The translations under genes and the position numbers were made by a program. From sequence record OK040170.1: 64,000 nt of DNA; one strand, written 5' to 3'. This document shows positions 19,231 to 64,000 of the stretch, piece by piece. The notes beneath the pieces were generated by a model. That model was not told where the DNA came from. It did not search any database and was given only the letters and a program-made list of their open reading frames with translations. Within the stretch, counting starts at the first letter, position 1; each line of letters opens with the position of its first letter.

Positions 19231-19235
19231 TTTTA

Positions 19236-19805: not shown

Positions 19806-19823
19806 TTTTAAAAGGTATTATAC

Positions 19824-20582: not shown

Positions 20583-20589
20583 GAAATAC

Positions 20590-20611
20590 AAGAGGGGCGA
20601 AAGCCTCTCTT
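20590..20611 (+). terminator. Intrinsic terminator
   Basis: AAGAGGGGC-GAAA-GCCTCTCTT followed by T-rich tail. Confidence 0.75.
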
Positions 20612-20671
20612 TATTCTGTCCTTTATTGGATTGAACTCGTTTCCTATGCACTTACAACGAGGACTATTCCG

Positions 20672-20926: not shown

Positions 20927-20929
20927 ATA

Positions 20930-47117: not shown

Positions 47118-47684
47118 ATGTACGTTGAGTTATTCGGACGTCCTAAATTTGAGATCCTTGCTGACCTCATCACTGTACAGAACAACGTGACCCCAGCACT
47201 GAACGCCAGCTACCTGACGTTTGGCGACGTTAAAGGCGCAACTGTTCCTGGTACTGAAGAACGCGTGAGCGTTCCTGTAACCGGTCGTAGCCCTTATAGC
47301 GGTCAACGTGTGTTCACGTATACCCGTATCGATCTGAACAAACTGCTGGGCGCCCAGGGCCCTTCCCTGATCCTGCCAGAGACAGCCAACACCGTAACGG
47401 ATCTGCTGCCGCTGATTCAGACCAAATACAAAATCTACATCGATGAAGTTGACGTAGCTAACGCAACTGAACTTCTGCCGTTCATCCCGGAAGGCGAAAC
47501 TGCGGTCGTCACTGTACAGACTAAAGCAGGTACGGATTACAACTCCCACGTCTGGAGCGGTAACCTGGACATCACCATCACCGGCGGCATGAAAATGCCA
47601 CGCGGCGCAATCCTTACCGAATCTGGTAAAGCGATTACGACCGAGAACGATAAGTTCATCGTCACTGAACAAGGCGGTAATTAA
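47118..47684 (+). CDS. Virion structural protein / putative tailspike adaptor (188 aa)
   Basis: phiKZ-like LTFG...YSGQRVFTYTRIDL domain; C-terminal ILTESGKAITTE motif; leads the tailspike array. Confidence 0.55.
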   Translation: MYVELFGRPKFEILADLITVQNNVTPALNASYLTFGDVKGATVPGTEERVSVPVTGRSPYSGQRVFTYTRIDLNKLLGAQGPSLILPETANTVTDLLPLIQTKYKIYIDEVDVANATELLPFIPEGETAVVTVQTKAGTDYNSHVWSGNLDITITGGMKMPRGAILTESGKAITTENDKFIVTEQGGN

Positions 47685-47695
47685 TCGCATAGTTG

Positions 47696-47738
47696 CTCTC
47701 CCGGACCTTCATGGTCTGGGGGAGTCTATGTTCATATG
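47696..47738 (+). promoter_or_regulatory. Hairpin plus late-type promoter motif (GTTCATATG)
   Basis: 12-bp hairpin 47696-47724; TATG core as in phiKZ late promoters. Confidence 0.55.
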
Positions 47739-47789
47739 TAATTCTTTCTTTTTTGACACGAAACCCCAGTCTCGACGCTAGAGGTATTA

Positions 47790-50006
47790 ATGGCTAACTC
47801 AAGCTTAGGCAATCGTATTTCGGAACTCCCACGTTCTACGAGATCGATCAACGATGCCGACTTAACCCCGATTTCTCAAATCAAAACCAACAATCCGGAA
47901 ACCGTAGCGGCAACCGTCGGTGACATTCGTGCCACCTTGGATTTTGATAATGCTTATAATTCCATCCCAGAAGGCCTGGCAGGGACTTTCCCTGAAGAGC
48001 GCTTCTATGTTTACACCGATAACTCAAAACGCTTTGTAAACGGCTACATCAACAAAAACGGCGTATCTGAAGTTATCCTCGACAAATCAGGTCAACCTCG
48101 TCGCTGGGCTACCCCGCTCTATATGCTCGCTATCGGTGAGCAATCTATCACAGTAGCTTCTGTTGACCAGATGCGTATCATGGCTCCGCAAGTTGACGGC
48201 CAAGTCGTACGTATGCGTAACTTCCGCCAGGGTAACGTTCAGTACAAAAACGGTGGCGATTGGGTTTACGACGCTAACGACAAAACCACCAAAGACGACG
48301 GCGTGATGTGTGTTGTTACCAACACCGGCGAACGTTTCAAGCGTGACATCTCTAGCGGCTCTATCGAAACCGATTGGTTCTTCGACCCGGTAATGGATAT
48401 CGCAGACTATAGTCTGACGCTGAACAAAGCCGCTGAGTGGGTGGAAGTAAAAGGTACTGAGTGGTGGCAGACCTGGTTACCAAGCACCCCAGCTTACATT
48501 ACCATGGTAGGTCCTGGCGGTGTTCGTACCTGTAAGAAACCAGTATGGCTCCGTATGTGGGCCGTGAGCTGGGACTTCCGTGGTACTTTGCTGGACTTCA
48601 CTGGAGGTGCTGTCGGTCAGACCAACGTCTCCGTAGTCTACGGTCACCGTAACTCTACACTGAGCAACCTGCGCATGTTATCCAGCGTAGCGTTGAAGCA
48701 GAAGGGTATCAACGTCTCAACGACTTCCGGTAACATTCACGGTCTGTCCGCAGCGTTCCTGAACTTCAACAACATCTCAATCAACCGTCACGACATTGCT
48801 TGGGATCTGGGCGATAACTGCTACCTGAACAACTGGTTCCAGTGCACCACTCAAGGCTGCCGTCTGCCAATCAACGCACCTAAGTCTGCAAACGCCGGGG
48901 AAACTCTGGTATGGACTAAGTGTATCTTCGGTGACGGCATTGGCCCTTACCTGAACACAGGTATGTCGATGACCTTCCACGGTTGCTCGTTCGACTACTC
49001 CGGTTACAAAACCGAAGCTGACCAATTGGCTAATGCTGAGAAAGAAGGTTTATTCAATATCGATAACTGTACGGTTCTGATGTATGGTTGCGGTAACGAA
49101 TATGGTAACTTGAACAGCCGGTGGTCAGGTCCAGTATGGAGAGGTACGGGTATTATCAAGCTCTACGAATGTCAGTGGATCTTGACTACTTCAAGTACAG
49201 TCGAACCTAACGAAACGACACCGCACTTGGTACACAACTACTACTTCGAAGATACTTCTGCCGACCTGTCGTCCAAGGTCTATCTGGAAGGGTTCTACGT
49301 CCCTAACCCTGACTTGAACCGATTCTCCGGTAGTTGGACTAATGGCTGCTTCATCAAAGTCACTGAGTCTTATCCAGGTCGTTATAAGGACATGTGGCGT
49401 AACTACACGCTAGGTAAGGGAGCTAACATGTTAATCTCCCCTAACCCTAACAACGTTGGTTACTTGACCATCAACCGTCCTCGTTGCTCTGGCGGTACTG
49501 TGGTTTCTCCTACTGAGACTTCTCTGTTCAAAGTGACTACTAACGGCAACAAGTTAGTGATCACTAGTTCAGATACTACCAAGGCACCCAAGACCTTCAG
49601 TTTCTACACTAAGGGTAAAGCGGGTAACTGGTACGGTTCTCAGTTGACCGTTAACGGTAACCGTGACATGACCGATGTACGTATTGCAACTAACTGCTTC
49701 GGTGTAGTGGGTTACGTAGCTCAGGACAACAGCATCACCTCGTTGGGCGAGCAACGTCAAACTTGGAACGCCGGTCTTCAGGGTATTAAGACCACGCCTC
49801 AGACTACTCCAGGTATGCGCATGACGCAGTTGGGTACGAGTGAATACCTGCCACTTTGTCCTCCGGGTACCGAGTGGGTTCGTGTCTCTATCGAGATGAC
49901 TAACTTTGGCATTGCAGCCGGTGAAGCTCCAGCGGTATTGGAAATCACCGACTTCTACGCTTGTGAAGTTGGCGTCTGTCGTGACACCAACCACCGCGTT
50001 TGGTAA
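47790..50006 (+). CDS. Tailspike / capsule depolymerase 1 (738 aa)
   Basis: Shared RISELP anchor, neck (SVDQMR...DDGV...FKR), parallel beta-helix repeats, lectin-like C-terminus. Confidence 0.85.
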   Translation: MANSSLGNRISELPRSTRSINDADLTPISQIKTNNPETVAATVGDIRATLDFDNAYNSIPEGLAGTFPEERFYVYTDNSKRFVNGYINKNGVSEVILDKSGQPRRWATPLYMLAIGEQSITVASVDQMRIMAPQVDGQVVRMRNFRQGNVQYKNGGDWVYDANDKTTKDDGVMCVVTNTGERFKRDISSGSIETDWFFDPVMDIADYSLTLNKAAEWVEVKGTEWWQTWLPSTPAYITMVGPGGVRTCKKPVWLRMWAVSWDFRGTLLDFTGGAVGQTNVSVVYGHRNSTLSNLRMLSSVALKQKGINVSTTSGNIHGLSAAFLNFNNISINRHDIAWDLGDNCYLNNWFQCTTQGCRLPINAPKSANAGETLVWTKCIFGDGIGPYLNTGMSMTFHGCSFDYSGYKTEADQLANAEKEGLFNIDNCTVLMYGCGNEYGNLNSRWSGPVWRGTGIIKLYECQWILTTSSTVEPNETTPHLVHNYYFEDTSADLSSKVYLEGFYVPNPDLNRFSGSWTNGCFIKVTESYPGRYKDMWRNYTLGKGANMLISPNPNNVGYLTINRPRCSGGTVVSPTETSLFKVTTNGNKLVITSSDTTKAPKTFSFYTKGKAGNWYGSQLTVNGNRDMTDVRIATNCFGVVGYVAQDNSITSLGEQRQTWNAGLQGIKTTPQTTPGMRMTQLGTSEYLPLCPPGTEWVRVSIEMTNFGIAAGEAPAVLEITDFYACEVGVCRDTNHRVW

Positions 50007-50011
50007 AACAG

Positions 50012-50053
50012 AGGAGAGGGCTTCGGCCCTCTCCTTATATCGTTTCCTATGAA
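50012..50053 (+). promoter_or_regulatory. Terminator plus late promoter unit
   Basis: AGGAGAGGGC-TTCG-GCCCTCTCCT (50012-50035), then TTCCTATGAA (50044-50053). Confidence 0.7.
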
Positions 50054-50082
50054 ATCTAAACAGACTTTGTAAGGTAAATAAA

Positions 50083-52347
50083 ATGGTTGATCAGGTTAAA
50101 ATATCTGAGCTCGGTAAGGCTACTGTTGTACGGGAAAGTGATGTTATTCCTTTAAACAACACCACGACCAGAGGTCTTCCTATTACTAAAGGAGCCAGTG
50201 TTGACAACTTAAGAAGTTGTTTCAATTTTGAACACGCCTTCTCAAGTGTAGACGAAGGTATTTCCAATACCAATTCTGATGAAGTATTCTACGTTTTTAC
50301 TGACTCCAATAAAGTGATGGTCGGTAAATATATTAATAGTAATGGCCATGCCTCTATAGTAGTCGGCGAAGACGGTAAACAGGTAACTTACCCAACTGTT
50401 AAAGCTAGCGCTAGTATGTCTAGTATTTTTGAAGCTGACGGGTATAAGGATTTAGGTAAGGTTCAGTACATTGCCGATTTAGTAAATATTGAGCCAAGTA
50501 ACGATAAACAAAGTATCATTGTAGAACGTTCAGTAGAAGGCGGCCCTGCTCTCAATTTAATCTACACTTACGATAGTAGATTCCAACAAGGGAATATAGA
50601 CGGAGTTCTGCGAGTAACCTCCGCCAAAGGTAAAGTTTGGGTTTTAGATATCTCAAACGGTTTGAATGTCTTTGCGTTCGGATTTGTACCAGAGGCGAAC
50701 AACTTGGCGCAAACGATCAATAAAGGCGTTAAATCCCTCGTAGACATGGCTATAACTAATAAAGCGACTTACGGCACATGCTCTCATTTACTGGTACCTG
50801 GCGTCAATCCTGCAACCGGCTTAGCCAAGTACGTAATGACCGAGACAATTAAACTCCCTAGCTTCATTGGCTTGAGGTTTACTTGTTCGACTCTCCTCGA
50901 TTATTCAGGTAATGACATTGACGGGATTACGGTCAATAATACCATGTTCCCTAATGCTACAGATGCCAACCTTATTAGTTGGTACAATACTCAATCGAAT
51001 GGCGTCACTGTCATTGAATGTCCAGGTAAGGTCATCGTAAAAGGAGTTGGGTCGGATACCTCTACCGCACACGGAGTTTGGGTGGGTAATACTGTAAAAG
51101 GGTTTATCAACTGCCGTGACGTATTAGTTTCAGATGTAACTATTATCGGATTCAAATACGGCCTACGTCATGATGGGGTGGATAGTTACCTGAACTCTTT
51201 CCGTAGGGTAGTCTGTGCCAGGAATTTTAACTCGGTTTACTTTAAAGGTACCGGAACTGGTAACGCCGGAGAAAAAATTTCATTCTTCGAATGTCTATTC
51301 AGCGACACCTCTTCATCCAACATTGTCCTTGATATTTTTGCGTTTGAGTTAACCTTCGATAATTGTAGTTTTGACTATCAGAAAGGCGATGTATTCTTCT
51401 TAGGTAAGAGTACAACTCACGGATGGGTTAAAATTACCAATTCCCATATCGAAGGATTCGATGGTTATCTTATCAACCAACCGGATAAGTGGACGGGTAC
51501 CGGACAGAAGTTCTACTTCGTCAATACCCAGGTTTGGGGCGTATACGCCACAATTCCATATAGTCCACCACGTAAACTCTTCGACGCAGAATTGGGAGCA
51601 TTCTACGTTAGCTTCCAGGATTCCCCGGTAAACTTCCGGAATAAGGGTACTAAGGACTACGGGACATTAACTGGATTTGGTAAAACGAATGACAGTAGTT
51701 CAGTTACTGGCCAGTTCACTGTGAATAGCTCCAGAACCGATCCATGTTACTTGATAAGCTATAACCTTGCTGATAACCGTAGGTATCGTTTTACCGGTAC
51801 AGAAGGCGTAGTATTACCTAACCCGGAACCTAGCACTGGGATTTCCTACATTACCCGCAACGGTGCAGTAGAAGTCACCTATGGCAAAATTGGGACAGAC
51901 GGGCTTCAGAGCGTTGTTATCAACTCTAGTGATGTCGGTGCTGAGGTAGACTTTGTCTTCCCTGAAAGGGTCCCGGTCGGTCCACGAGATACCTTTAATA
52001 GCATGATATCAGTTAAGCAAGGTAGTGCGACTGGTGATGTGAAAGTGTTCGGTATTGCGCGCTGCTTTACAGACCCAACTATGACAGGTAAGAAGAACGC
52101 TGCTGACGATAACGTAGTGATCACCACTAACTATCCAGTACTAGGTACAACCGCCGATCGTAACTTCCTCCTTTCAGAAGCACTAGGTGAAGTAGGTACT
52201 AACGTGACCCGTAACGATTTCGTCGCAACCCCTCCATTAACATCAACGTTATGGAACGCCGTTAAGAGCGCCAGTATTGGTCTTCGTATTACTGGCTTCA
52301 CTGGTTCAATCGAGATCAAACTACCAGTGTACTGGAAGGTAAAATAA
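50083..52347 (+). CDS. Tailspike / capsule depolymerase 2 (754 aa)
   Basis: KISEL anchor, neck, beta-helix with NAGEKISFFECLFSD (shared with spike 1 NAGETLVWTKCIFGD). Confidence 0.85.
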   Translation: MVDQVKISELGKATVVRESDVIPLNNTTTRGLPITKGASVDNLRSCFNFEHAFSSVDEGISNTNSDEVFYVFTDSNKVMVGKYINSNGHASIVVGEDGKQVTYPTVKASASMSSIFEADGYKDLGKVQYIADLVNIEPSNDKQSIIVERSVEGGPALNLIYTYDSRFQQGNIDGVLRVTSAKGKVWVLDISNGLNVFAFGFVPEANNLAQTINKGVKSLVDMAITNKATYGTCSHLLVPGVNPATGLAKYVMTETIKLPSFIGLRFTCSTLLDYSGNDIDGITVNNTMFPNATDANLISWYNTQSNGVTVIECPGKVIVKGVGSDTSTAHGVWVGNTVKGFINCRDVLVSDVTIIGFKYGLRHDGVDSYLNSFRRVVCARNFNSVYFKGTGTGNAGEKISFFECLFSDTSSSNIVLDIFAFELTFDNCSFDYQKGDVFFLGKSTTHGWVKITNSHIEGFDGYLINQPDKWTGTGQKFYFVNTQVWGVYATIPYSPPRKLFDAELGAFYVSFQDSPVNFRNKGTKDYGTLTGFGKTNDSSSVTGQFTVNSSRTDPCYLISYNLADNRRYRFTGTEGVVLPNPEPSTGISYITRNGAVEVTYGKIGTDGLQSVVINSSDVGAEVDFVFPERVPVGPRDTFNSMISVKQGSATGDVKVFGIARCFTDPTMTGKKNAADDNVVITTNYPVLGTTADRNFLLSEALGEVGTNVTRNDFVATPPLTSTLWNAVKSASIGLRITGFTGSIEIKLPVYWKVK

Positions 52348-52388
52348 TTTTATCAGGGGGCTTCGGCCCCAATAACGAGGCTGAGAGA

Positions 52389-54521
52389 ATGCCAGTATCA
52401 CCGACGAAATATACTAAGATCTCCGACTTACCTAAAAAGGAAGTTATGGAGAACGATCAGTTTATCATTAATACCAACGACACTAAGCTGGATCAAACGA
52501 GCGTAGCTTCTCTCTACGATATTCGTGAGGGCGTCTACTTCAGTAACGCAGCTAACACCATCGCCGAAGGTCTGGCCTCCGTGGACGATGACGAGATGTT
52601 CTTTGTCTACGACACTGCAGCTAAGTTCTCTGTCCTTCAGTACATGAAGGTTCGTAACCAGGCATCACCTGTCATTGGTTCCGATGGCAAACAACGCCGT
52701 TTCCCTACTTACCTTTCCATGTTGAATGTAACTGCTATCTCGGAAACGTCCGGTTACGACATCATCGGTAAGGTTGACAATTTCGCCGCTCTACGTTCTA
52801 TCAAACCTACCTACACGGGTCAGCGCGTTATCCTGGCTGGGTATTTCTCTGGTAGCTCTTTGGGATCCGGGGAATTTGTGGGGTACGCAGGGACAGCTAA
52901 CGATGATGGCGGTACTACTGCCTCAGGCGATGGCTTTTATTGGAAGCGGAACAAGACTGCCTTTACGCTCGAAGATTTCGGCGGTGGCCAGGTAGACGAT
53001 ACTGAAGCAATGCGTGCATCTCAGAAAGCACAAGTAGGCCCTATTACCTTATCTCCAGGTAAAACCTATTATTACTCATCTCCGGTAAAACATTATTCTA
53101 AAGCCGGTTGGATTGGTAATGGTGCTTCTATCGTATTCAGAGGGACAGGTAACCGAATTCCGTTTATCTCTTCTCCGACTACAGCTGCTGGAGTTGATAA
53201 CGATCGCGCAAACGGAAGCACTGCTGTAGTCGGAGCTATTTTTAAAGATCTGACTATTGACGTCAACTATGTCGATACTACGGGCGCATTAGGCTTTGAG
53301 TTTGGCGAGAACACGTTGGACAACTGGACGAATTGCGTCTTTACTAACGTGACATTCAAGAACGGTAAGTTCGATAACTTGGGGCTGCAGAATAACTCCA
53401 CCGATAACCAGTTTATCCGCTGTACTTTCATTAACGCAGGTGAAGACTCGGTTACTGTACGCGGCGGTTGTCTCCGTAATGAGTTTGTTGAATGTGATGT
53501 TGTCAATAGCGCACAGGTAGCTCACCGAGACGGAACCTTCTACGGAGACGGTATCGTCAACAAAGGTCGTGATACCTTGATCAAAAGCTGTCGCTTCATC
53601 AATATCGGTAATGGTAAGAAAGGCGCAGGTATTGCAAATAACGCTGAAGATACCAAGAACGCCGACGAAGCTAGTAACGGTACTTACCTCAACAACTATT
53701 TCATTAACTGTTATGGCGGTTTTGGTTTCGGTACGGTTAACCCAGACTTCATCGCAGCAGGTGATTTGATTAAAGGTATCAAGGCTATCGGAAACGTATT
53801 TGTAAATACGCTTCGCACCGTGATAGGTATTCGTGATCTTTACCAACCGGTTCTGTTGGATAACGTTATCCTTACCCAGACCACCGGTAACGTAACCACG
53901 ATTGAGATTACCAACTGCACCAACTTCCAAATGACCGGTCGTGTTACAGATGCCGCTGGCTCCGCTATTACGATTACGTCTTCCTCGGGTAAAGTTGATT
54001 TGGTGGCGGATAATGTCTCCACGACCAAGACACTCAACGGGGTGGTTATTACCGACAGTAATCGGATTACGGGCAGTATCCGTTTGATCAATGCTCAACG
54101 CCGCGGCTGTACTTTCTCTAACTGTAACAACATGGACTTAGACCTCTACGTTGAGTCGCCTGCACAGGACGCGCTGGAAGCAGTTGGCTGTCGTTACTCT
54201 AACTTAGATGTTAAGTTGGTGAACGTCCCTGAACACGGTATGACATTGAACGGCGTTGTTGAAAGTAATATCAAGTTCAACATCAATGATGCGGGAGTTA
54301 AAACTCCATCTGCATTTTATCCGATCCGGTTACTGGGTGTACGTAACAGTATCCTCAGCGGAGTATCGTCTTCGGCTAATGCGAATAAACCACTTTACGA
54401 TATTACATCCGATGCTAATAACGTAAACGTATTAATCGCCAATAGTCGTCTTGGAGCGGGTACTACGGGTAAAGTACAGGTTGGTCAAGGGTCTACTATT
54501 ACCCAGAACAATATCATCTAG
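52389..54521 (+). CDS. Tailspike / capsule depolymerase 3 (710 aa), pectate-lyase-like
   Basis: KISDLP anchor, neck (FAALR...GSGEF...DDGG...WKR), EDFGGGQVDDT, Asn ladders, GEDS and GDGI beta-helix motifs. Confidence 0.88.
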   Translation: MPVSPTKYTKISDLPKKEVMENDQFIINTNDTKLDQTSVASLYDIREGVYFSNAANTIAEGLASVDDDEMFFVYDTAAKFSVLQYMKVRNQASPVIGSDGKQRRFPTYLSMLNVTAISETSGYDIIGKVDNFAALRSIKPTYTGQRVILAGYFSGSSLGSGEFVGYAGTANDDGGTTASGDGFYWKRNKTAFTLEDFGGGQVDDTEAMRASQKAQVGPITLSPGKTYYYSSPVKHYSKAGWIGNGASIVFRGTGNRIPFISSPTTAAGVDNDRANGSTAVVGAIFKDLTIDVNYVDTTGALGFEFGENTLDNWTNCVFTNVTFKNGKFDNLGLQNNSTDNQFIRCTFINAGEDSVTVRGGCLRNEFVECDVVNSAQVAHRDGTFYGDGIVNKGRDTLIKSCRFINIGNGKKGAGIANNAEDTKNADEASNGTYLNNYFINCYGGFGFGTVNPDFIAAGDLIKGIKAIGNVFVNTLRTVIGIRDLYQPVLLDNVILTQTTGNVTTIEITNCTNFQMTGRVTDAAGSAITITSSSGKVDLVADNVSTTKTLNGVVITDSNRITGSIRLINAQRRGCTFSNCNNMDLDLYVESPAQDALEAVGCRYSNLDVKLVNVPEHGMTLNGVVESNIKFNINDAGVKTPSAFYPIRLLGVRNSILSGVSSSANANKPLYDITSDANNVNVLIANSRLGAGTTGKVQVGQGSTITQNNII

Positions 54522-54527
54522 TCATAC

Positions 54528-54564
54528 GGCCAGGGGTTTCCCTGGCCTATGTTTGTTCATATGA
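54528..54564 (+). promoter_or_regulatory. Terminator plus late promoter unit
   Basis: GGCCAGGG-GTTT-CCCTGGCC (54528-54547), then GTTCATATGA (54555-54564). Confidence 0.65.
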
Positions 54565-54596
54565 CAGTTTCCTAAAACAATCAGGATAAGTATACA

Positions 54597-56609: not shown

Positions 56610-56613
56610 AACC

Positions 56614-56656
56614 AGAGGAGGGGAAACCCTCCTCTTTTATTTTGGGTTCCTATGAA
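56614..56656 (+). promoter_or_regulatory. Terminator plus late promoter unit
   Basis: AGAGGAGGG-GAAA-CCCTCCTCT (56614-56635) with T tract, then GTTCCTATGAA (56646-56656). Confidence 0.75.
56615..56634 (+). repeat. 20-bp direct repeat copy 1
   Basis: GAGGAGGGGAAACCCTCCTC, identical at 60546-60565. Confidence 0.85.
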
Positions 56657-56686
56657 TATTTACACAATACCATGAGGCTCACGTCC

Positions 56687-59600
56687 ATGTCAGATAACGA
56701 TTTACAATTGCGCATTACCGAGTTGCCGAAGTTAGACCACTTCGATTCCAACTCTGTTCTCCCTGCGGTAGGGCGTAGTCAAGGCACTAAGATGACAGGT
56801 AAAGTTAACTTCCGTGAAATGCGGAGTTACTTCGATTTGTCAAACGCCTACGAAACCATTAAGGACGGTGTCGATGCCACTAAGTTAGGCGATACGTTCT
56901 TCGTCTACTCTGATGGCACCAAAGTATTCGCCAACGAATACCAGAACATCGGTGGCGCTGCCACTCCAATCCAAGATCCCAAAGAAGGGGTCATCTATTA
57001 CCCAACGCGTATGGGTATTGTAGGTAGTCTGGCTGCCGGTGCTACCGTAGGTAGCTTTGATGAACTCCGTAACACTCGCCCGTTAAAAGAGGGTGTTAGC
57101 ATTTATCTCAGTAGCTATTATAAAGGCCTTAATAAAGGTGGCGGTGAGTTTATTGGCTATTACGGTAAACGCGCCGACGATGGCGGCATGGTAGCCGGTG
57201 ACGGGAATAACTACTACTGGGTACGTAACGCTAACTTCGTCACTCCGGAAATGTTTGGTGCTTACGGTACTCCAGATAAAGATGACTCAGCTGCTATAGA
57301 AGGGGCACTGAACTCAGGATTAGATGTTCAGTTCGACGGTAGCGCTACTTATATCGCAAACCGTACCCTTGTCCTGAAGTCAATCAAGTGGCAACAATTC
57401 ATTGACGGTAACGGAGCATGGATCAAGTATAGCGATAAATCCCGTGGTTTGATTAACGAGATTGACGCCAATGGTGTTACCCAGCGTTACACGAAGTTCC
57501 GTAGCTTCTTCAACTTGAATCTCCAGGGTCCTGCTACCAAGAACTCTAAGTGGAACGACGTTAACCAGTGCGATGCTCTGTGCATTAGTTACGGTGTAGT
57601 TGAGAACTGTAACTTCTACGGATGGTCTAACGCCCTGCGTGGTTTCGGTGAAGCCTACGTAAACAACTGCTTCGGTGACGACCTTCGTACAGCAATGTTC
57701 TCCTGCTACGATCCAGGGCATAACGAAATCACTAACAGTTCGGTTGGTTGGTGTTCTGGTGACGCTATCATCCTTAAAGGTGGTTCAGGTAAAGCTCACA
57801 ACGTCGATATCGTCTACGCAGGCTGTATTGACAAAAACAACGAAGACGGCGCTACGGCTCTCCCAGGTTGTATCGTGTCATGTGGCGCAGATGGTGCCGG
57901 ATCTCAAAACATCCAGATCTCCAACATCAGTTGCCAGTACTTCGGTTGTGCTGGTCTGAACATCCAGGGTGACGGCGTAACGGTTTCCGGTGACATGAAC
58001 CTGGGGTCTATCTACGAAGATAACTTCCAGTACGCTAACCAAGCAGCTGCCTTGTGGATTGGCGCTAAGAACTTCACCATCGGTAACTTGCACTTTAACA
58101 AAGTACACGTCGGTGTAGGGATCAACGGTAACTGCGCGAATGGTTCGATTGGTAAGATTCGGATCATGAGCAAAACCAACCTGGCAGGATCTACTCTGTT
58201 CTCGGCAACAGATGGCCCTAACTCCCAGATCACCAAAGTTATCGTGGATTCAATCGATTTCCTCGGCGCGTCTACGATTAACAACGACGTTTACATCAAC
58301 ACCGATGGCCTGTATCTGAAATCGTTCTATATCCAGTCCTTGAACAACCTTCAAGGCGGTTATACGGTTGCTCTGCGTAAGAACGCTCGTATCGGTAAAA
58401 TGATTCTGGCAGCAACGACTTCAGCAAGCACGAGTCCGGTAATGCTCATCGAGAGCGATTCCGTCATCGATGAACTGGAGTTCCGTCGTAACTTCGGTAC
58501 TGCATTGGTGGTTGAGAACAATGCTCGTCCAGCAATCAAACGTCTTTCCTTCCAGTACAAACAAGGCATTGCACCACCGTTCGTCATTAAAGGCGACGGC
58601 ACCATGACCTTGAACTGGGGTGACGTCGATATGTTCGGCCCGAGTGTGGCTCGTCCTCAGATCGCCGGTAAGCTCGTAATGAACTCTTACCAAGGTCCTA
58701 CGTTCCGCCCGTTTGATGCAGCCGTATATGCCGGCGTAAGTTACCCTAATCGTTCGGTGGACTTTGTCGAAGAACTTCGAATGGTAGGTCCTGCTAAAGA
58801 AGGGGATAAGATAGAACTTAAGAGCTACGTGTTAGGTAAAGGTATAGGGGGCGGTAATTTCATCGGGACGTTGATTACAACCCCTGATGATGGCGGTATG
58901 GTGATTACCGGTAACGGTTACAGCTGGCTTCGTCAAGTTCAGGACAAACGTGTTAACGTAGAGCACTTTGGGGCTATCGGCGATTATGGGAGGATAACTT
59001 TGAAGGGTACCGATAGTACGGTGGCCTTAGCTAACGCGATCGCAGCCGCTAAGCGCTTGGGGTACTCTATATTCTTCCCATGTTCAAAGATCAACGAGGG
59101 TTACTACACAACTAAAATGTTAGTAATGACCGGGATTATGAACATAGTCGGAGATAGTATTCGCATTTACGTTGCATCTGACAAGTTCGATAAAACTAGC
59201 GGTAGTTACGTGTTATGTTGGGGTAATCCAGATACCGATTATAAGGACATCAGTGGCTGGCCTAATATAGCTGATATTCACGTAGAGGACGTCTCTAAAC
59301 GCGCATCGCCAATGAGTGGTATTTTCTTTAAATTCACTGGCGGTAATGTCGGCAGGATTTCCGCCCGCGCATTCGACGGAGCAGGTTACCAATTTGGCCC
59401 AGTGTACGACTCGGTATTCGCTGGGCTGGTGACGGAACGCTGCGGTAACGAGACGACCTACTCTCACTACTGGAGAGGTAACGGAGACGAGACTAACTCA
59501 ATAACAGTTAGTAACATTCTCTGTCACGATGCGTATCATAAGGGTGTCTCGATTAACGGCTCTAAGCATAACATCGAACGCGTCCACATTGAAGCAACCG

Positions 59601-60541
59601 CTACGTTAGTAACTGATGACGGTTATACCGGAAGTACGAAGTCAGGATTAACTTACCTTAATCATCAGTTCTATTTAGTTGCAGGGACTGTAGGTGATTT
59701 AACTGTTAACGACTATCGTAGAAGTAACGGTAAAACGTACTACGGTGATAAGGATGCTCTCGACGTAGGTAGTCATACTCGACTTGTACTTGATTTATCG
59801 TCTAGTATAGCCACCTCTTCATCAAGCGCAGCTAAATCGATAACTAGTACGTTTGGCGGATCGAATATGTATGGTTACATCGGCGCACTATCTACCGACG
59901 TTTATCATGCAGAACCTAGCGCCAGGATAAACATTGGAAATATCTTGGTTAAAGACACTGCATTTATCTGGGAGTCTGCGCATAAGGTATCCTTTGGTCG
60001 TATCCGTAACCTAGGGGCCAGTTACGGTAATTTCGATTCTGTTACGTTTACCTTACCGTACGTGGCGACACCAAACTCAACTGCTACTACTAATTTCACC
60101 AATTGTACTTTCAACGGCGGAGTTAATGGGTTGTGTACCGGATACAACTATTTCAACGATTGTACCATCGCTTCAATTTCGTTAAATAGTTCAGCAACGC
60201 CAGAAAGAGCTAAGTTCAACAACTGCTTGATTACGGGAAATACACTAATCGACGGAGTAAACGCTACAATCAACTCTAAGAATTTATGGTTCTCATCATG
60301 TAGATTCTCTGGTAACGTAGCAATTAGTAATATCAAAAACGATGGGCCTCGTTTCTCTGGGCAATGCGTCTGTTACGGTACAGTAACAGGTTGGGTTACT
60401 CCAAATGGGATTCCGGTAGGTACAATGTGCGAAAGATTGGGTCCGGCAGCAGATGGAGATGGTTTAGTTTACTACTGTTCTAAACTAGATTCCACTACTT
60501 CTGTATCCACTTGGATACCTGTGGTTAAATTTACAGCATAG
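56687..60541 (+). CDS. Double-module tailspike / depolymerase 5 (1284 aa)
   Basis: Start moved to ATG 56687 (GAGG RBS; RITELP anchor). Neck + beta-helix module occurs twice (SFDELR...GGGEF...DDGG...WVR and FVEELR...GGGNF...DDGG...WLR). Confidence 0.88.
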   Translation: MSDNDLQLRITELPKLDHFDSNSVLPAVGRSQGTKMTGKVNFREMRSYFDLSNAYETIKDGVDATKLGDTFFVYSDGTKVFANEYQNIGGAATPIQDPKEGVIYYPTRMGIVGSLAAGATVGSFDELRNTRPLKEGVSIYLSSYYKGLNKGGGEFIGYYGKRADDGGMVAGDGNNYYWVRNANFVTPEMFGAYGTPDKDDSAAIEGALNSGLDVQFDGSATYIANRTLVLKSIKWQQFIDGNGAWIKYSDKSRGLINEIDANGVTQRYTKFRSFFNLNLQGPATKNSKWNDVNQCDALCISYGVVENCNFYGWSNALRGFGEAYVNNCFGDDLRTAMFSCYDPGHNEITNSSVGWCSGDAIILKGGSGKAHNVDIVYAGCIDKNNEDGATALPGCIVSCGADGAGSQNIQISNISCQYFGCAGLNIQGDGVTVSGDMNLGSIYEDNFQYANQAAALWIGAKNFTIGNLHFNKVHVGVGINGNCANGSIGKIRIMSKTNLAGSTLFSATDGPNSQITKVIVDSIDFLGASTINNDVYINTDGLYLKSFYIQSLNNLQGGYTVALRKNARIGKMILAATTSASTSPVMLIESDSVIDELEFRRNFGTALVVENNARPAIKRLSFQYKQGIAPPFVIKGDGTMTLNWGDVDMFGPSVARPQIAGKLVMNSYQGPTFRPFDAAVYAGVSYPNRSVDFVEELRMVGPAKEGDKIELKSYVLGKGIGGGNFIGTLITTPDDGGMVITGNGYSWLRQVQDKRVNVEHFGAIGDYGRITLKGTDSTVALANAIAAAKRLGYSIFFPCSKINEGYYTTKMLVMTGIMNIVGDSIRIYVASDKFDKTSGSYVLCWGNPDTDYKDISGWPNIADIHVEDVSKRASPMSGIFFKFTGGNVGRISARAFDGAGYQFGPVYDSVFAGLVTERCGNETTYSHYWRGNGDETNSITVSNILCHDAYHKGVSINGSKHNIERVHIEATATLVTDDGYTGSTKSGLTYLNHQFYLVAGTVGDLTVNDYRRSNGKTYYGDKDALDVGSHTRLVLDLSSSIATSSSSAAKSITSTFGGSNMYGYIGALSTDVYHAEPSARINIGNILVKDTAFIWESAHKVSFGRIRNLGASYGNFDSVTFTLPYVATPNSTATTNFTNCTFNGGVNGLCTGYNYFNDCTIASISLNSSATPERAKFNNCLITGNTLIDGVNATINSKNLWFSSCRFSGNVAISNIKNDGPRFSGQCVCYGTVTGWVTPNGIPVGTMCERLGPAADGDGLVYYCSKLDSTTSVSTWIPVVKFTA

Positions 60542-60545
60542 AACG

Positions 60546-60565
60546 GAGGAGGGGAAACCCTCCTC
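60546..60565 (+). repeat. 20-bp direct repeat copy 2 (terminator), followed by late promoter GTTCCTATGAA at 60573-60583
   Basis: Exact match to 56615-56634. Confidence 0.85.
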
Positions 60566-60613
60566 CTATTTTGTTCCTATGAAACATTACTCTCTTATAC
60601 TAGGTGCAAACCC

Positions 60614-63600
60614 ATGGCCGATAATTTCAGCGGTATTAAGATTAGTCAGTTAGACGATCCTAATCGTATTAACGACAACGATATCATCCCGTTCACTAAC
60701 GATGACATGGGCGATAAACAAACACGTAAAATAAAGTTAAGTGCCCTACGTGATCAGCTCAATTACGCCAACGCTTTCCTAACCGTACAGGAAGGTTTAG
60801 CCAACACTATCCCAGGACAGATCTTCCACGTATACGTCGATGACACCCAGTTAGAAGTCTACGCGTACCTTAACAACAATGGCGCAGCAGAGATCGTCCA
60901 AGATGCGCAGGGTAATCCTTTTAAAGGACAAACCGCTAAAGCGCTGGACTTCATTCGTGGTGAGTTAGGACTTACCATGATCGGTCACGTAAGTTCCTTT
61001 GCACGACTGCGTGAAATCAAACCTCCTTTCGAAGGTGCTATTGTAGAACTTCTGGGTTGGAACGAGGGCTCCACTTACGGCGGTGGTCGTTTCCAGGGTA
61101 AGTTATCAACTGGTGCCGACGACAACGGTATTGTTGCGGCAGGCGACGGTTTCCACTGGCGTCGCATTAATGTCGACGAAGGCATTAACCCAGAGTGGTT
61201 CGGTTACGTGAATGGTTCAGGTAATGACGTATCCACTACGTTGAAACAAGTCATTGCTCAGGCGGTTAACTTGAAACGTCCTGTTGTATTCCGTGATGGG
61301 GCTCAAATGAGTCTAGCGGTAGCAGGGATTGAAATTCCAGTAGGTGTTGATCTTACTGTGGCTAACGGTGGGAGAGCTTACTTTGAAATCACTCACGAAA
61401 TCGAAACAACCGGACAGTTCCTTGTCAAAAGTAAAAACCGAATCTCCGGACTTGTCTTCAACTACCCGAAACAAACAAAAGACATCAATGCTAAGCCGAT
61501 TGTGCGTTACGGACCTATTTTTGTCGGTGCTGGATTTTATTCTTCTTTCACGGGAATAAATGTAGGTAACGCTTACTACGGATTTAAGATCGGTGGTAAC
61601 GACGAAGGTTCCGCATCGTACATCACGATGAAAGATATTAACGGCGCCCCTATCTACCGCGGAATTTCACTTGACCGTGTTCTGGACATCCCTCGTATTT
61701 CCGATATCCATTGGAACTACAACATGTACCTGAACTCCGATCAGGACTACGCACAATCTCTGAAACAGTGGATTCATGAGAATGGTGAGGCGTTCCACTT
61801 TGGTCGTGTTGACTTTGCTGAAGTACAACGTATCTTTGCATTCGGGTACAGTAAGGGTATCTTCCTGAGAGGTGAGCGTTATGCAGGTAGCGCCGATTCC
61901 ATTCGCTTCACAGGTTGCGACATGGACATTTGCGTTAACCCTATCTACGCTCAGAACTTTAGTGGCCAGTTAGTTATTCGTAACGGTAAGTTCTTCGGTA
62001 CAACGTACGGTAACCTTGTCATCGATAAGTTGAATCTGTTCAACATGGACGGATATAACCCTAACGTTGTTCTTAACGGTATCTTGATGATTGCATCGGG
62101 TTCACGTTTTAACTTCATGATGGCAACTAACTTCAATGGCCGGGCTATCCATTTCGCTGACTCTTACGATAACGTAATGGGCGACATTCGAGTAATGTGG
62201 TCTGGGAACCAAAGCGCCTTTGCATTAGAAGTTGGTGCATGGAAAGCTGACAGTACGTCTAGTCGCGATGAATCTAACGCCAATACATTCTTGGCAGTAA
62301 TGGCGCATAACTGCCGTGAGAAGTCGTGGTTGATTGCTGGTAGTAAAACCAACGTTGTCCGTATTCACGACGAGGCAATCTTGTCCACTACGGCAACTCC
62401 GAGTAATCCTATCGGGATTGAGTCACGAAATGGTTACGGGTATACCTCGTGCTACTTCTCTTCAATCGGCGGTCACTTAGGCGATGTCAGTTTCGCTACT
62501 TTCGACAAGGCGTCTACCGTTAAACCAGTATTGACGATTGGTTCTTCGGTCACTTGTAGTTGCGACAATATCGCTTCTGGTCGTGATGGTGCGAACGTTG
62601 CGGTTATCTCAGGTGATCCAGGTCCAAGTGGCGCTGGTACTATCGCATCTGTTACCTGTAATGAATTCCGTACACTGGCCAACGCCAGGACTGCGACTAC
62701 TGCGCTGGTTTGTAACAACGCAATACTCGTGGATCCTAGCTCCCCTATTTTGTCAGGGACGATCAACGGAGATTTAACGTTGATGTCTAGTGCTACTTGG
62801 ATAGGTCTGAGTAATCTTCGCGTTGGCGGCGTGACCAATGTTGGGACACCTGCGATGTTTAGTAACTGTACGTTCAACGGTTTACTGAATATCACGTTCG
62901 ATAACTTCGGCACCATCCTTAACCGGATGCGCCATACGTTCGAACACTGTAAAATAAACGACGCCGTTAAGTCAGATACGTCGAAAGTCATTTTCCGAGA
63001 TTGCTCACTTATTTCGACTAAAGACTTTACTATTACGGGTGCGGGTGAAGGAGTACGCTTTGAGTCTAGTCGCATTAACATGAACGTCATCATGGACAAT
63101 AAAGCTAGTCTTGAATTCATCGACTCTGAGGCGAATGGGACTAACGTCGCTACCAGTTCTACCGGTACAATTTTAGTTTCTAACTCTAGCTGGTCGACCG
63201 GTGCAATTAATGCTACCGCAGCTACGCAAGTTATTATCCGTGAAGGTTCGGTAATGCAAGCCTTGAACGGTGTAGTTAATCTTAGAGTTATCGACTCAAC
63301 GGTTGCTTCTCCGTTTACGTTGGGTAATAACGCTCGTGTTTGGTTGTCTAATGCAAACATGAATGATGTAACGATTTCTGGCACAGGTATTAACTTGGAT
63401 GCCGATAAAACGTTCTTCAACCGTTTCGTATTTGATAGCGGCAAAACCAATACCGGTGCGTGGCGTATCTCTCAAGATTGCGTTGCGTGGACAACTGCTA
63501 ACTGGGTTGTTCCTACCGTTGTATCGGGCTACGGTGTACGTACTTACGATATATCTACTGGTACAATTTATAAGGTTGTCTCTGGAGCATGGAAAGTAGT

Positions 63601-63619
63601 AACTGAAAGTACAGCGTAA
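60614..63619 (+). CDS. Tailspike / depolymerase 6 (1001 aa), apparently chimeric
   Basis: KISQL anchor, neck, then long beta-helix; the second half resembles module 2 of spike 5. Confidence 0.85.
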   Translation: MADNFSGIKISQLDDPNRINDNDIIPFTNDDMGDKQTRKIKLSALRDQLNYANAFLTVQEGLANTIPGQIFHVYVDDTQLEVYAYLNNNGAAEIVQDAQGNPFKGQTAKALDFIRGELGLTMIGHVSSFARLREIKPPFEGAIVELLGWNEGSTYGGGRFQGKLSTGADDNGIVAAGDGFHWRRINVDEGINPEWFGYVNGSGNDVSTTLKQVIAQAVNLKRPVVFRDGAQMSLAVAGIEIPVGVDLTVANGGRAYFEITHEIETTGQFLVKSKNRISGLVFNYPKQTKDINAKPIVRYGPIFVGAGFYSSFTGINVGNAYYGFKIGGNDEGSASYITMKDINGAPIYRGISLDRVLDIPRISDIHWNYNMYLNSDQDYAQSLKQWIHENGEAFHFGRVDFAEVQRIFAFGYSKGIFLRGERYAGSADSIRFTGCDMDICVNPIYAQNFSGQLVIRNGKFFGTTYGNLVIDKLNLFNMDGYNPNVVLNGILMIASGSRFNFMMATNFNGRAIHFADSYDNVMGDIRVMWSGNQSAFALEVGAWKADSTSSRDESNANTFLAVMAHNCREKSWLIAGSKTNVVRIHDEAILSTTATPSNPIGIESRNGYGYTSCYFSSIGGHLGDVSFATFDKASTVKPVLTIGSSVTCSCDNIASGRDGANVAVISGDPGPSGAGTIASVTCNEFRTLANARTATTALVCNNAILVDPSSPILSGTINGDLTLMSSATWIGLSNLRVGGVTNVGTPAMFSNCTFNGLLNITFDNFGTILNRMRHTFEHCKINDAVKSDTSKVIFRDCSLISTKDFTITGAGEGVRFESSRINMNVIMDNKASLEFIDSEANGTNVATSSTGTILVSNSSWSTGAINATAATQVIIREGSVMQALNGVVNLRVIDSTVASPFTLGNNARVWLSNANMNDVTISGTGINLDADKTFFNRFVFDSGKTNTGAWRISQDCVAWTTANWVVPTVVSGYGVRTYDISTGTIYKVVSGAWKVVTESTA

Positions 63620-63626
63620 GATAAAT

Positions 63627-63667
63627 ACGATGGTCCGGATCTACTCCGGCCATCGTGTTCCTATGAA
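63627..63667 (+). promoter_or_regulatory. Hairpin plus late promoter unit
   Basis: ACGATGG-T-CCGGA-TCTAC-TCCGG-CCATCGT (63627-63656), then GTTCCTATGAA (63657-63667). Confidence 0.65.
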
Positions 63668-63697
63668 TATCTACAGCCTTACAATAGGACTAAACAC

Positions 63698-64000
63698 ATG
63701 GCAATCACTGGCATTGGGGCGGAGAACACCAGGACTTACCCTGTAGAGAATGTCACTGCATTACGTGCAGTTGTACCTCAAGCAGATGGTCAGTTATTTG
63801 AAATGGTCGGTGCTCCGATCGATAACGGTACAGGGCGTAACCAAAAAGGTGGCGTGTTCCGTTACTACGCAGATCTCAACATCGCCGATTATCCAGATGA
63901 CGGCGGTTACTTTATTAAACCGGGAGCAGGTACTGGTGTTCTGATTCGTCAGCACGAACCTAACGAGTTCTTTGTTGATTGGTGGATCACTTCCCCAGAT
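63698..64000 (+). CDS. Tailspike 7, N-terminal fragment running off the window (absent from the ORF track)
   Basis: ATG 63698 with AGGA RBS; hand translation MAITGIGAENTRTYPVENVTALRAVVPQADGQ...GGVFRY...PDDGG...VDWW matches the neck domain; no stop in 101 codons. Confidence 0.8.
   Translation, partial: MAITGIGAENTRTYPVENVTALRAVVPQADGQLFEMVGAPIDNGTGRNQKGGVFRYYADLNIADYPDDGGYFIKPGAGTGVLIRQHEPNEFFVDWWITSPD

What the first reader, a model, noticed from the sequence alone, without database searches (positions are those of the whole stretch)
47790..64000. Array of at least 7 tailspike/depolymerases with a common anchor and unrelated catalytic domains
Six complete genes and one partial gene span more than 16 kb. 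The complete genes share a ~110-aa anchor (ISELP...T....LR...NA...I.EG...T....FYV..D...Y.N..G.A), and all share a neck domain, but they diverge in the beta-helix and C-terminal modules. This is a multi-capsule, probably hyperbranched, adsorption apparatus. Each spike is a candidate new polysaccharide depolymerase with therapeutic or serotyping value.
Basis: partly seen in the sequence, partly recalled or inferred. Interest (0 to 1): 0.7.

Follow-up and report, generated by a model that had tools for sequence, protein, structure and literature searches.

The report
Tailspike gene array of a jumbo Serratia phage
This stretch of the giant Serratia phage BUCT660 holds a row of six complete tailspike genes plus the start of a seventh: the six share one attachment domain but carry different sugar-cutting bodies, and the row is the Serratia counterpart of the many-fibred host-recognition apparatus already described for Klebsiella phage phiKp24.

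Summary
The window is 100% identical to Serratia phage BUCT660 (Moabitevirus, a phiKZ-like jumbo phage). Six intact genes (T1-T6) share an N-terminal anchor of about 110 aa and a connector ("neck", Pfam PF27114). T7 is cut by the window end; it lacks the anchor and has only a weak neck. The bodies are beta-helix tailspike or depolymerase relatives, shown by profile hits for T1/T2/T7 and T3, by an AF2 model with Foldseek for T5, and more weakly for T4 and T6. The anchor family is rare: 133 representatives among 1.84 billion proteins, and 23 of 50,697 phage records. It occurs only in Moabiteviruses and phiKp24-like Klebsiella jumbo phages, which share the same locus order. In phiKp24 the fibres form a branched complex, and 11 of its 14 fibres are confirmed depolymerases. 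New details found here:
- Anchors are conserved by position while bodies are swapped behind them.
- T5 carries two neck-plus-beta-helix modules in tandem.
- T6 is an in-frame fusion left by one deletion of about 4 kb.
- Most spike genes follow a hairpin and a TATG-containing motif.
- DUF7941 genes flank the array.
Verdict: a real but ordinary feature, a new member of a known kind. Enzyme activity, virion location and branching remain inferred.

The parts
47118..47684 (+). D0: 188-aa DUF7941 (PF25613) protein immediately upstream of the array
   Evidence: Pfam E 2.5e-11. The same gene sits at the same place in every Moabitevirus, in KpLz_1_41 and in phiKp24.
47790..50006 (+). T1, 738 aa: anchor aa 1-112 (47790-48125), neck aa 122-189 (48153-48356), beta-helix body
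   Evidence: The profile of the T1/T2/T7 group hits K2-2 TSP, gp1 (23sh), Kp7 gp52 and Depo32/DpK2 at E 1e-31 to 1e-23.
50083..52347 (+). T2, 754 aa: anchor aa 1-109 (50083-50409), neck aa 119-192 (50437-50658), beta-helix body
   Evidence: The body at aa 349-430 hits Kp7 tail fibre 7xyc. It is 28% identical over 661 aa to a phiKp24 fibre.
52389..54521 (+). T3, 710 aa: anchor aa 1-111 (52389-52721), neck aa 121-190 (52749-52958), beta-helix body
   Evidence: The profile A7 hits K2-2 TSP (positions 112-539) and CBA120 TSP2 (109-577).
54597..56609 (+). T4, 670 aa: anchor aa 1-113 (54597-54935), neck aa 123-196 (54963-55184), body, C-terminal fibre-tip-like domain
   Evidence: The AF2 model of aa 1-230 has pLDDT 85. 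Its neck fold matches the domain preceding the beta-helix in AM24, CBA120 TSP2, K2-2 TSP, DpK2, Depo32, WceF and K64-1 S2-4.
56687..60541 (+). T5, 1284 aa, a two-module spike: anchor aa 1-111 (56687-57019), neck 1 aa ~121-183 (57047-57235), module 1 aa ~195-655 (57270-58651), neck 2 aa ~691-751 (58757-58939), module 2 aa ~790-1284 (59055-60538)
   Evidence: The AF2 model of aa 85-1284 has pLDDT 75 and shows two beta-rich modules joined by a low-confidence linker. The best folds are depolymerase tailspikes. Module 1 is 96-100% identical in relatives; module 2 is 24% identical in Moabite and ParM-25.
60614..63619 (+). T6, 1001 aa: anchor aa 1-110 (60614-60943), neck aa 119-188 (60968-61177). It is an intact ORF and an in-frame fusion of two genes that are separate in eight-slot relatives.
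   Evidence: One deletion of about 4 kb relative to Kodama, 2050HW, ParM-25, Moabite and Yaphecito removed one whole gene and parts of two.
63698..64000 (+). T7, first 101 of 605 aa (cut by the window end): no anchor, starts directly with a weak neck
   Evidence: It is 97-100% identical in the other Moabiteviruses apart from Totoro, which has no T7. The Moabite record notes HHpred matches to tailspikes.
47732..47741 (+). Spacer motif with TATG, before T1
50045..50054 (+). Spacer motif with TATG, before T2; it follows the hairpin at 50011-50036
54557..54566 (+). Spacer motif with TATG, before T4; it follows the hairpin at 54528-54547
56648..56657 (+). Spacer motif with TATG, before T5; it follows the hairpin at 56614-56635
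60575..60584 (+). Spacer motif with TATG, before T6; it follows the hairpin at 60545-60566
63659..63668 (+). Spacer motif with TATG, before T7; it follows a GC-rich inverted repeat

Best explanation
The region is the receptor-binding-protein locus of a phiKZ-like jumbo myovirus. Each of T1-T6 is most likely a trimeric tailspike built of four parts. The first is a ~110-aa alpha/beta anchor that fixes the spike to the peripheral baseplate or to another spike. The second is a short separating helix. The third is a small connector domain (PF27114). The fourth is a right-handed beta-helix that binds, and probably cleaves, one surface polysaccharide of the host. T7 has no anchor and would have to attach in some other way. 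Together with two DUF7941-headed beta-helix proteins further downstream, the virion would carry about nine different spikes, so one particle could recognise several polysaccharide types. Each position in the array keeps its own anchor variant, while the part behind it is exchanged between phages by recombination. This changes specificity without disturbing assembly. Most genes look like separate late transcription units, with a hairpin and then a TATG-type start motif about 35-55 nt before the ATG. Shown here: the domain layout, the homology to solved depolymerase spikes, the homology and synteny with phiKp24, the anchor-conserved and body-swapped pattern, and the spacer punctuation. Inferred: trimer state, virion location, catalysis, substrates, how the anchor docks, and promoter function.
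For: - **Identity of the window.** It is BUCT660 at 100% identity, a Moabitevirus with virion RNA polymerase and phiKZ-type head genes.
- **Anchor.** Paralogue BLAST. The family has 133 representatives, always N-terminal, on proteins mostly 570-1350 aa long, some of them on 250-305 kb contigs.
- **Neck.** It equals PF27114. Its fold matches the pre-helix domain of solved depolymerases.
- **Bodies.** Profile hits to K2-2 TSP, 23sh gp1, Kp7 gp52, Depo32/DpK2 and CBA120 TSP2 run through neck and beta-helix. The T5 model is closest to Depo32, WceF, AM24, TSP2 and K64-1 S2-4.
- **Homology with phiKp24.** The anchor occurs only in Moabitevirus and phiKp24-like records. The locus order is the same. 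T8 and T9 are 41% and 34% identical to their phiKp24 counterparts.
- **What is known of phiKp24.** Its fibres are branched and 14 in number (PMC9700779); 11 are active depolymerases (PMC13385381).
- **Module exchange.** T4 versus Moabite: anchor 95%, neck 39%, body ~20% identity. T5: module 1 96-98%, module 2 24%.
- **Spacers.** 6 of the 7 window matches to the 10-nt motif lie before T1, T2, T4, T5, T6 and T7; 1.8 matches are expected by chance. The same holds in the other Moabiteviruses checked (Moabite, Kodama, ParM-25; three spike genes in Totoro). phiKZ late promoters are defined by TATG, with the G as start site (PMC4666361).
Against: - No virion proteomics or imaging of the BUCT660 baseplate was available.
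- No catalytic residues were identified. Identity of the T5 model to solved enzymes is only 10-18% over the aligned fold.
- Body evidence is thin for T4 (a sub-threshold Pfam Beta_helix hit at 16 bits against a cut-off of 26, plus a PHROG tail-spike hit) and for T6 (similarity to T5 module 2, plus annotation in a relative).
- No branching domain of the T4 gp10 type was detected, and the docking partner of the anchor is unknown.
- The T6 fusion may or may not fold.
- The spacer motif is absent before T3 and is essentially absent from the phiKp24 locus, with one match in 47 kb.
Confidence: 0.75

Rival explanations
1. The proteins are the same, but the assembly differs. The anchored spikes are not arranged as a hierarchical tree hanging from one primary fibre. 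Instead they plug individually into repeated sites of the phiKZ-type outer peripheral baseplate, or into DUF7941 filaments: the 'fibre cloud' proposed for phage Goslar.
For: - DUF7941 genes bracket the array in every genome examined.
- In phiKZ a DUF7941 protein sits in the outer peripheral baseplate (PMC13250141). The Goslar preprint proposes that DUF7941 proteins form filaments carrying carbohydrate-binding or beta-helix domains (10.64898/2026.04.21.720040).
- T8 and T9 are exactly such DUF7941 plus beta-helix proteins.
- No T4 gp10-like branching domain was found in T1-T7.
Against: - The anchor is not DUF7941: hhalign probability is 0.1%.
- The anchor paralogues are only 23-47% identical to one another, yet 95-100% conserved at the same array position in all relatives compared except Totoro and the swapped T2 of Moabite (60-92%). 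This fits distinct docking sites better than one repeated site.
- The fibre-cloud model is itself speculative.
Confidence: 0.3
2. The anchored spikes are alternatives that compete for the same few docking sites. Individual virions would then carry different subsets, a mixed population rather than one particle with all spikes.
For: - All six share one anchor fold.
- The number of anchored genes varies from 4 to 8 among close relatives without loss of viability. This is easy to explain if the sites are shared.
Against: Position-specific conservation of each anchor variant. In phiKp24, tomography showed a large, regular, branched complex (PMC9700779).
Confidence: 0.12
3. Some or all of the proteins are binding-only fibres or structural spacers without enzymatic activity. 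T5 module 1 is the leading candidate, since it is conserved while module 2 is exchanged.
For: - No catalytic motif was identified.
- 3 of the 14 phiKp24 fibres had no confirmed activity (PMC13385381).
- T5 module 1 is 96-100% identical across all Moabiteviruses compared that have a T5, as expected of a structural element. It has few relatives.
Against: The fold relatives are overwhelmingly enzymes, and most fibres in the homologous phiKp24 array are active.
Confidence: 0.25

Closest known systems
Tail-fibre locus of Klebsiella jumbo phage vB_KpM_FBKp24 (phiKp24, Maaswegvirus): 14 fibres, hyperbranched
   Same: The N-terminal anchor family is the same: 7 of the 12 clustered phiKp24 fibres carry it. 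The gene order is the same: DUF488-N3a-type gene, 188-aa DUF7941 gene, spike array, small genes, two DUF7941 plus beta-helix genes, dUTPase. The phiKZ-like backbone is the same. T8 and T9 are orthologous at 41% and 34% identity.
   Different: BUCT660 has 6 anchored spikes on one strand; phiKp24 has two divergent sub-arrays. The bodies are mostly unrelated in sequence, the best pair being T2 with one phiKp24 fibre at 28%. BUCT660 has no spike with a long insert between anchor and neck, which two phiKp24 fibres have. The host is Serratia rather than Klebsiella. The TATG spacer motif is specific to Moabiteviruses.
Alcyoneusvirus (phiK64-1 / RaK2) and Ackermannviridae (CBA120, Menlow group) multi-tailspike complexes
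   Same: Several beta-helix depolymerase spikes per virion. The neck/connector domain and beta-helix are homologous or fold-similar to CBA120 TSP2 and K64-1 S2-4.
   Different: Those systems attach through T4 gp10-like or Tail_spike_N domains. None was detected here, and the anchor of this family is absent from them.
phiKZ tail fibres gp131-gp135
   Same: Paralogous fibre proteins of a phiKZ-like phage that share an N-terminal attachment segment and differ at the C-terminus, mounted on the outer peripheral baseplate (PMC13250141).
   Different: The phiKZ fibres end in a beta-propeller, not a beta-helix. No sequence or fold relation of their N-termini to the anchor could be shown with the libraries at hand.
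Single capsule/EPS depolymerase spikes: Depo32, DpK2, K2-2 TSP, Pantoea WceF
   Same: Neck helix, connector domain and beta-helix layout; significant sequence-profile and fold matches.
   Different: They have a different N-terminal particle-binding domain, or none. Identity is low (10-18% over the fold for the T5 model), so substrates cannot be transferred.

Membership tests
Beta-helix tailspike / polysaccharide depolymerase receptor-binding protein | Modular layout: N-terminal particle-binding part, separating helix with connector domain, central body | tested here: met
   The anchor and neck HMMs hit T1-T6. The AF2 model of T4 aa 1-230 shows an alpha/beta domain, a helix at 110-123 and a beta domain. 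The neck is PF27114.
Beta-helix tailspike / polysaccharide depolymerase receptor-binding protein | Right-handed parallel beta-helix central domain | tested here: met
   Met for T1/T2/T7 and T3 by profile hits that extend 250-450 residues into solved beta-helix spikes. Met for T5 by AF2 plus Foldseek. Only weak support for T4 (sub-threshold Pfam Beta_helix, PHROG tail spike). Support for T6 comes from similarity to T5 module 2.
Beta-helix tailspike / polysaccharide depolymerase receptor-binding protein | Catalytic residues and measurable polysaccharide cleavage | not testable with these tools
   No active-site mapping was possible at 10-18% identity, and there are no activity data for any Moabitevirus spike in the papers searched.
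Beta-helix tailspike / polysaccharide depolymerase receptor-binding protein | Homotrimer that is part of the virion | not testable with these tools
   Only monomer prediction was available, and no virion proteome of BUCT660 or its close relatives was found in the library.
phiKp24-type multi-fibre locus of phiKZ-like jumbo phages | Shared N-terminal anchor domain on several clustered fibres | tested here: met
   tblastn with the T6 anchor finds only Moabitevirus and phiKp24-like records, 23 of 50,697. The HMM finds 7 anchored fibres in phiKp24.
phiKp24-type multi-fibre locus of phiKZ-like jumbo phages | Conserved locus order between the head-protease block and dUTPase, flanked by DUF7941 genes | tested here: met
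phiKp24-type multi-fibre locus of phiKZ-like jumbo phages | Primary fibre with a long N-terminal part or T4 gp10-like branching domain that carries the others | tested here: inconclusive
   There is no Pfam hit to such a domain in T1-T7, and no insert between anchor and neck in BUCT660. T5 module 1 could play that part, but this was not shown.
phiKp24-type multi-fibre locus of phiKZ-like jumbo phages | Branched fibre complex seen on the particle | not testable with these tools
   The published BUCT660 micrograph is described only as showing a head and a contractile tail (PMC9387219).
DUF7941 fibre proteins of chimalliviruses | N-terminal DUF7941 (PF25613) module | tested here: not met
   T1-T7 have no PF25613 hit, and anchor against DUF7941 gives hhalign probability 0.1%. 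The flanking D0, T8 and T9 do have it.
Ackermannviridae-type TSP complex | Tail_spike_N (PF18668) or T4 gp10-like attachment domains | tested here: not met
   No such Pfam hit in T1-T7. Only the connector and beta-helix are shared with CBA120 TSP2.

The most novel reading that the evidence does not exclude
The ~110-aa anchor is an undescribed docking domain, private to the Moabitevirus and phiKp24 lineage of phiKZ-like jumbo phages. Each array position has its own variant, matched to its own site on the peripheral baseplate or DUF7941 scaffold. T5 would be a true two-headed spike whose conserved first beta-helix serves as the platform or a second enzyme. This would give a defined 'socket code' for how nine or more spikes are ordered on one particle.
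Probability: 0.3. Interest if true: 0.6.

Novelty: new member of a known kind. Interest (0 to 1): 0.4.

Why it matters
The analysis shows that the many-spike apparatus described for Klebsiella phage phiKp24 is not a one-off. It is a conserved locus type shared with Serratia/Pectobacterium jumbo phages, built on a rare common anchor. That gives a clean sequence marker for finding such loci: the anchor HMM finds about 130 protein clusters, and those checked include 250-305 kb contigs. It also documents where spike modules are exchanged, and it supplies a set of uncharacterised beta-helix bodies for which no Serratia substrate is known. It does not overturn anything. The genome is public, and in the Moabite record the genes are already labelled tail fibre or tail spike.

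Tried and rejected
- **Anchor as a diverged DUF7941:** rejected, hhalign probability 0.1%.
- **Anchor related to a solved structure:** the profile search of PDB sequences found nothing below E 1. Foldseek hits of the anchor-plus-neck model covered only the neck, except within the family itself.
- **One-to-one correspondence of anchor positions between Moabitevirus and phiKp24:** not seen; all pairs are 21-45% identical.
- **Pfam and NCBIfam scans of T1-T7:** essentially empty. The local Pfam copy lacks PF27114, which appears only in precomputed tables.
- **Single-sequence PDB searches:** uninformative for T1 and T7; profiles were needed.
- **Sigma-70 promoter scan:** fewer sites than in shuffles (14 against 25.6), as expected for a phage with its own polymerases.
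- **Rfam scan of the window:** no match.
- **Word-based homologue searches:** few relatives returned.
Full report
**Identity of the window**

The 16.2-kb region is 100% identical to Serratia phage BUCT660 (OK040170.1, bases 171790-188000). The window therefore corresponds to record positions 124001-188000. BUCT660 is a 272.7-kb myovirus from hospital sewage in Beijing, classified in Moabitevirus (PMC9387219). Its backbone is phiKZ-like. The window holds virion RNA polymerase subunits, a phiKZ-type prohead protease and a 2213-aa protein with a lytic transglycosylase domain. The Moabite record cites phiKZ and EL virion proteins as homologues. In the BUCT660 record most of the genes in question are 'hypothetical protein'. 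In Moabite they are 'tail fiber', 'tail spike' or 'neck protein'. I found no paper that analyses the array in a Moabitevirus.

**The observation**

Six intact + strand ORFs fill 47790-63619, and a seventh starts at 63698 and runs off the window. I call them T1 to T7. For T5 I use the ATG at 56687, as in the record, because this aligns its N-terminus with the others. The mechanical ORF starts earlier, at a TTG.

- BLASTP between all pairs of T1-T6 gives N-terminal matches of 26-35% identity, with E from 1e-8 to 2e-36.
- An alignment of the first ~112 residues (A3) was searched as a profile against 1.84 billion representative proteins. It returned 133 proteins. In all but the weakest few the match starts at residue 1-25, most being 570-1350 aa long.
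It recurs inside T5 at about residues 690-750.
- T7 has no anchor. Its neck is weak against my HMM (E 2e-3), but T7 aligns with the neck and body of T1 over about 430 residues (E 2e-15).

The description is therefore correct, with two adjustments. First, the bodies are not all unrelated: T1, T2 and T7 form a distant group, and T5 module 2 resembles the rear of T6. Second, the genome has two more beta-helix genes (T8, T9) about 3 kb beyond T7, with a different N-terminal domain.

**What the parts are**

*Neck.* This is the Pfam family PF27114 (Phage_tail_beta) according to the precomputed tables. My Pfam copy lacks that model, which explains the empty scan. By sequence the neck matches Pantoea WceF, DpK2, Depo32, CBA120 TSP2 and the AM24 tailspike.

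*Anchor plus neck model.* An AF2 model of T4 residues 1-230, built with 124 family sequences, has mean pLDDT 85. It shows an alpha/beta domain (residues ~25-108), a helix (110-123) and a small beta domain. In PDB the fold search matched only the small beta domain. The matches were to the domain that precedes the beta-helix in solved capsule and EPS depolymerases, including K2-2 TSP and phiK64-1 S2-4.

*Anchor.* It has no relative among solved structures by sequence. Among predicted viral structures, matches of anchor-plus-neck length (roughly 170-200 aligned columns) fall, among the named hits, only on Moabitevirus and phiKp24 proteins. It is not DUF7941. Across 124 family members, six columns are at least 90% conserved: L12, R48, T67, F73, V75 and V84 in T4 numbering.

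*Bodies.*
- A profile of the T1/T2/T7 group hits K2-2 TSP, tail spike gp1 (23sh), Kp7 gp52 and Depo32/DpK2 at E 1e-31 to 1e-23. The alignments reach 250-320 residues beyond the start of the neck.
- A profile of the T3 group hits K2-2 TSP over positions 112-539 and CBA120 TSP2 over 109-577, plus plant and bacterial pectin-lyase-fold enzymes more weakly.
- T5 (residues 85-1284; 19-sequence alignment) gave a model of mean pLDDT 75. It has two long beta-rich modules separated by a low-confidence linker, each preceded by a neck. Its best PDB matches are depolymerase tailspikes: Depo32, WceF, AM24, CBA120 TSP2, AS12 gp42, DpK2, K2-2 TSP, phi92 colanidase and K64-1 S2-4. Each match spans about 480-700 columns, which is one module.
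- T4 has only a sub-threshold Beta_helix hit, a PHROG tail-spike hit and a C-terminal match to fibre-tip families.
- The rear of T6 resembles T5 module 2.
- No catalytic residues could be assigned.

**Relatives and the closest known system**

tblastn with the T6 anchor against 50,697 phage records finds 23 records, which fall into two groups. One is the Moabiteviruses, from Serratia and one Pectobacterium isolate. The other is a set of ~300-kb Klebsiella phages that includes vB_KpM_FBKp24 (phiKp24), KpLz-2_45, MJ359, LPKP23, Centimanus and several unannotated 'KpXx' records. Some of the metagenomic family members sit on contigs of 250-305 kb.

The locus order is the same in all of them:
1. head-protease block;
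2. a DUF488-N3a-type gene;
3. a 188-aa DUF7941 gene;
4. the spike array;
5. a few small genes;
6. two DUF7941 plus beta-helix genes;
7. dUTPase.

phiKp24 has 12 clustered spike-size genes, 7 of them with the anchor. For phiKp24, cryo-ET showed a branched fibre complex and 14 predicted depolymerase fibres (PMC9700779). The DepoCatalog study reports confirmed activity for 11 of the 14 (PMC13385381). BUCT660's array is thus the Serratia-phage counterpart of a described system.

The number of anchored genes varies within the genus: 4 in Totoro, 6 in BUCT660, and 8 in Kodama, Moabite and ParM-25; the truncated Yaphecito locus shows 7.

**Evolutionary pattern**

I compared genes at the same array position.
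- T4 of BUCT660 and Moabite are 95% identical in the anchor, 39% in the neck and about 20% in the body.
- T2 is 60% identical in the anchor and about 23% behind it.
- T5 is 96-100% identical through the anchor, neck 1 and module 1, and 24% after the second neck.
- Paralogous anchors within one phage are only 23-47% identical.

So each position keeps its own anchor while the receptor-binding part behind it is exchanged, with boundaries at the anchor/neck junction or at the second neck.

T6 of BUCT660 is an intact ORF. Its front part (anchor, neck and the start of the body) corresponds to one gene of the eight-slot relatives, and its rear part corresponds to another gene two positions further on. 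One deletion of about 4 kb removed one whole gene and parts of two. Whether this fusion folds is unknown.

In the 2050HW record, three array genes are annotated in two pieces each. Compared with ParM-25 they differ by four frameshifting indels in all, distributed one, one and two. These may be sequencing errors.

**Gene punctuation**

Every spacer in the array begins with a GC-rich hairpin. Four of these pass the terminator scan.

Six of the seven spacers then carry a 10-nt motif containing TATG, 35-55 nt before the start codon.
- Six of the seven window matches to the pattern TCMTATGWMW are these sites, where 1.8 matches are expected by chance.
- A stricter form matches only in the array: 5 sites against 0.54 expected.
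- The same holds in Moabite, Kodama and ParM-25, and before three spike genes in Totoro, but not in phiKp24-like loci.
- phiKZ late promoters are defined by TATG with the G as start site (PMC4666361).

I therefore read most spike genes as separate late transcription units. T3 has only a 41-nt spacer and no motif, so it may be read together with T2. This is an inference; no transcript data were available.

**How it most likely works**

I commit to the following reading, with confidence 0.75. T1-T6 are trimeric spikes mounted through their anchors, and T7 is mounted some other way. Each body recognises, and probably cleaves, one surface polysaccharide. Together with T8 and T9, one particle is equipped for several glycan types, as in phiKp24.

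What the anchors bind is open. In phiKZ a DUF7941 protein sits in the outer peripheral baseplate that carries the fibres (PMC13250141). The Goslar preprint proposes DUF7941 filaments that bear carbohydrate-active domains (10.64898/2026.04.21.720040). Since DUF7941 genes bracket the array, direct docking on such a scaffold is a serious rival to a tree hanging from one primary fibre. I found no T4 gp10-like branching domain. T5 module 1 is conserved while module 2 is swapped, so it is a candidate platform, but it may equally be a second enzyme.

**Assessment**

It is a new member of a known kind, in a public and partly annotated genome. The anchor family, the position-specific anchors, the two-module T5, the T6 fusion and the spacer motif are modest additions. 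Activity, substrates, virion location and architecture remain to be shown.

Searches printed alignment-block and ORF bounds that bracket breaks, before I had recognised them as breaks. I have not repeated those places.

Noticed in passing
window 34150-39085: The virion RNA polymerase beta-type subunit is annotated as two genes (34150-37524 and 37895-39085) with a ~370-nt gap. In Kodama, 2050HW, ParM-25 and Totoro an HNH endonuclease gene lies just upstream of the second piece. BUCT660 has no such ORF there. No Rfam intron family matched.
   Followed up: partly
L005 (Pectobacterium phage vB_ParM-25, ON375847.1) 10329-40180: A phage recorded on Pectobacterium aroidearum (Philippines) has D0, T1-T4 and T7-T9 100% identical in protein to BUCT660, which was isolated on Serratia marcescens (China). 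It differs only in T5 module 2 and in having three genes where BUCT660 has the T6 fusion.
   Followed up: partly
L004 (Serratia phage 2050HW, NC_048668.1), spike array: Three array genes are annotated in two pieces each. Relative to ParM-25 there are four frameshifting indels in all (one, one and two) and no in-frame indels. These are possibly sequencing errors.
   Followed up: partly
L001 32668-36796 (BUCT660 record 192667-196795, outside the window): Two adjacent paralogues (683 and 688 aa, 27% identical) have an N-terminal DUF7941 module and a beta-helix-like body. They are conserved in every relative and are 41% and 34% identical to phiKp24 counterparts.
   Followed up: partly
window 46136-46561: A small DUF488-N3a-family gene (Pfam E 1.6e-7) sits two genes upstream of the array. 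A homologue sits immediately upstream of the DUF7941 gene in the ~300-kb Klebsiella-host phages.
   Followed up: no
L006 (Serratia phage Totoro) 22812-26627: Totoro's fourth spike (978 aa) has two neck domains (aa 124-196 and 357-426). It is followed by a 185-aa ORF that carries only a neck. The rest of the array is missing.
   Followed up: no
window 25797-32438, - strand: A 2213-aa protein has a lytic transglycosylase (SLT) domain near residues 1854-1970 and is annotated 'tail lysozyme'.
   Followed up: no
window 46507-47073: The mechanical ORF (188 aa, ATG at 46507) is longer than the BUCT660 annotation (46729-47073). Moabite, Kodama, 2050HW and ParM-25 annotate the long form.
   Followed up: no
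L012 (phiKp24) 10903-13650 and 18652-21303; L009 15435-18236: Some phiKp24-group spikes have about 210 extra residues between anchor and neck. This could be the branching part proposed for the primary fibre. No BUCT660 spike has such an insert.
   Followed up: no
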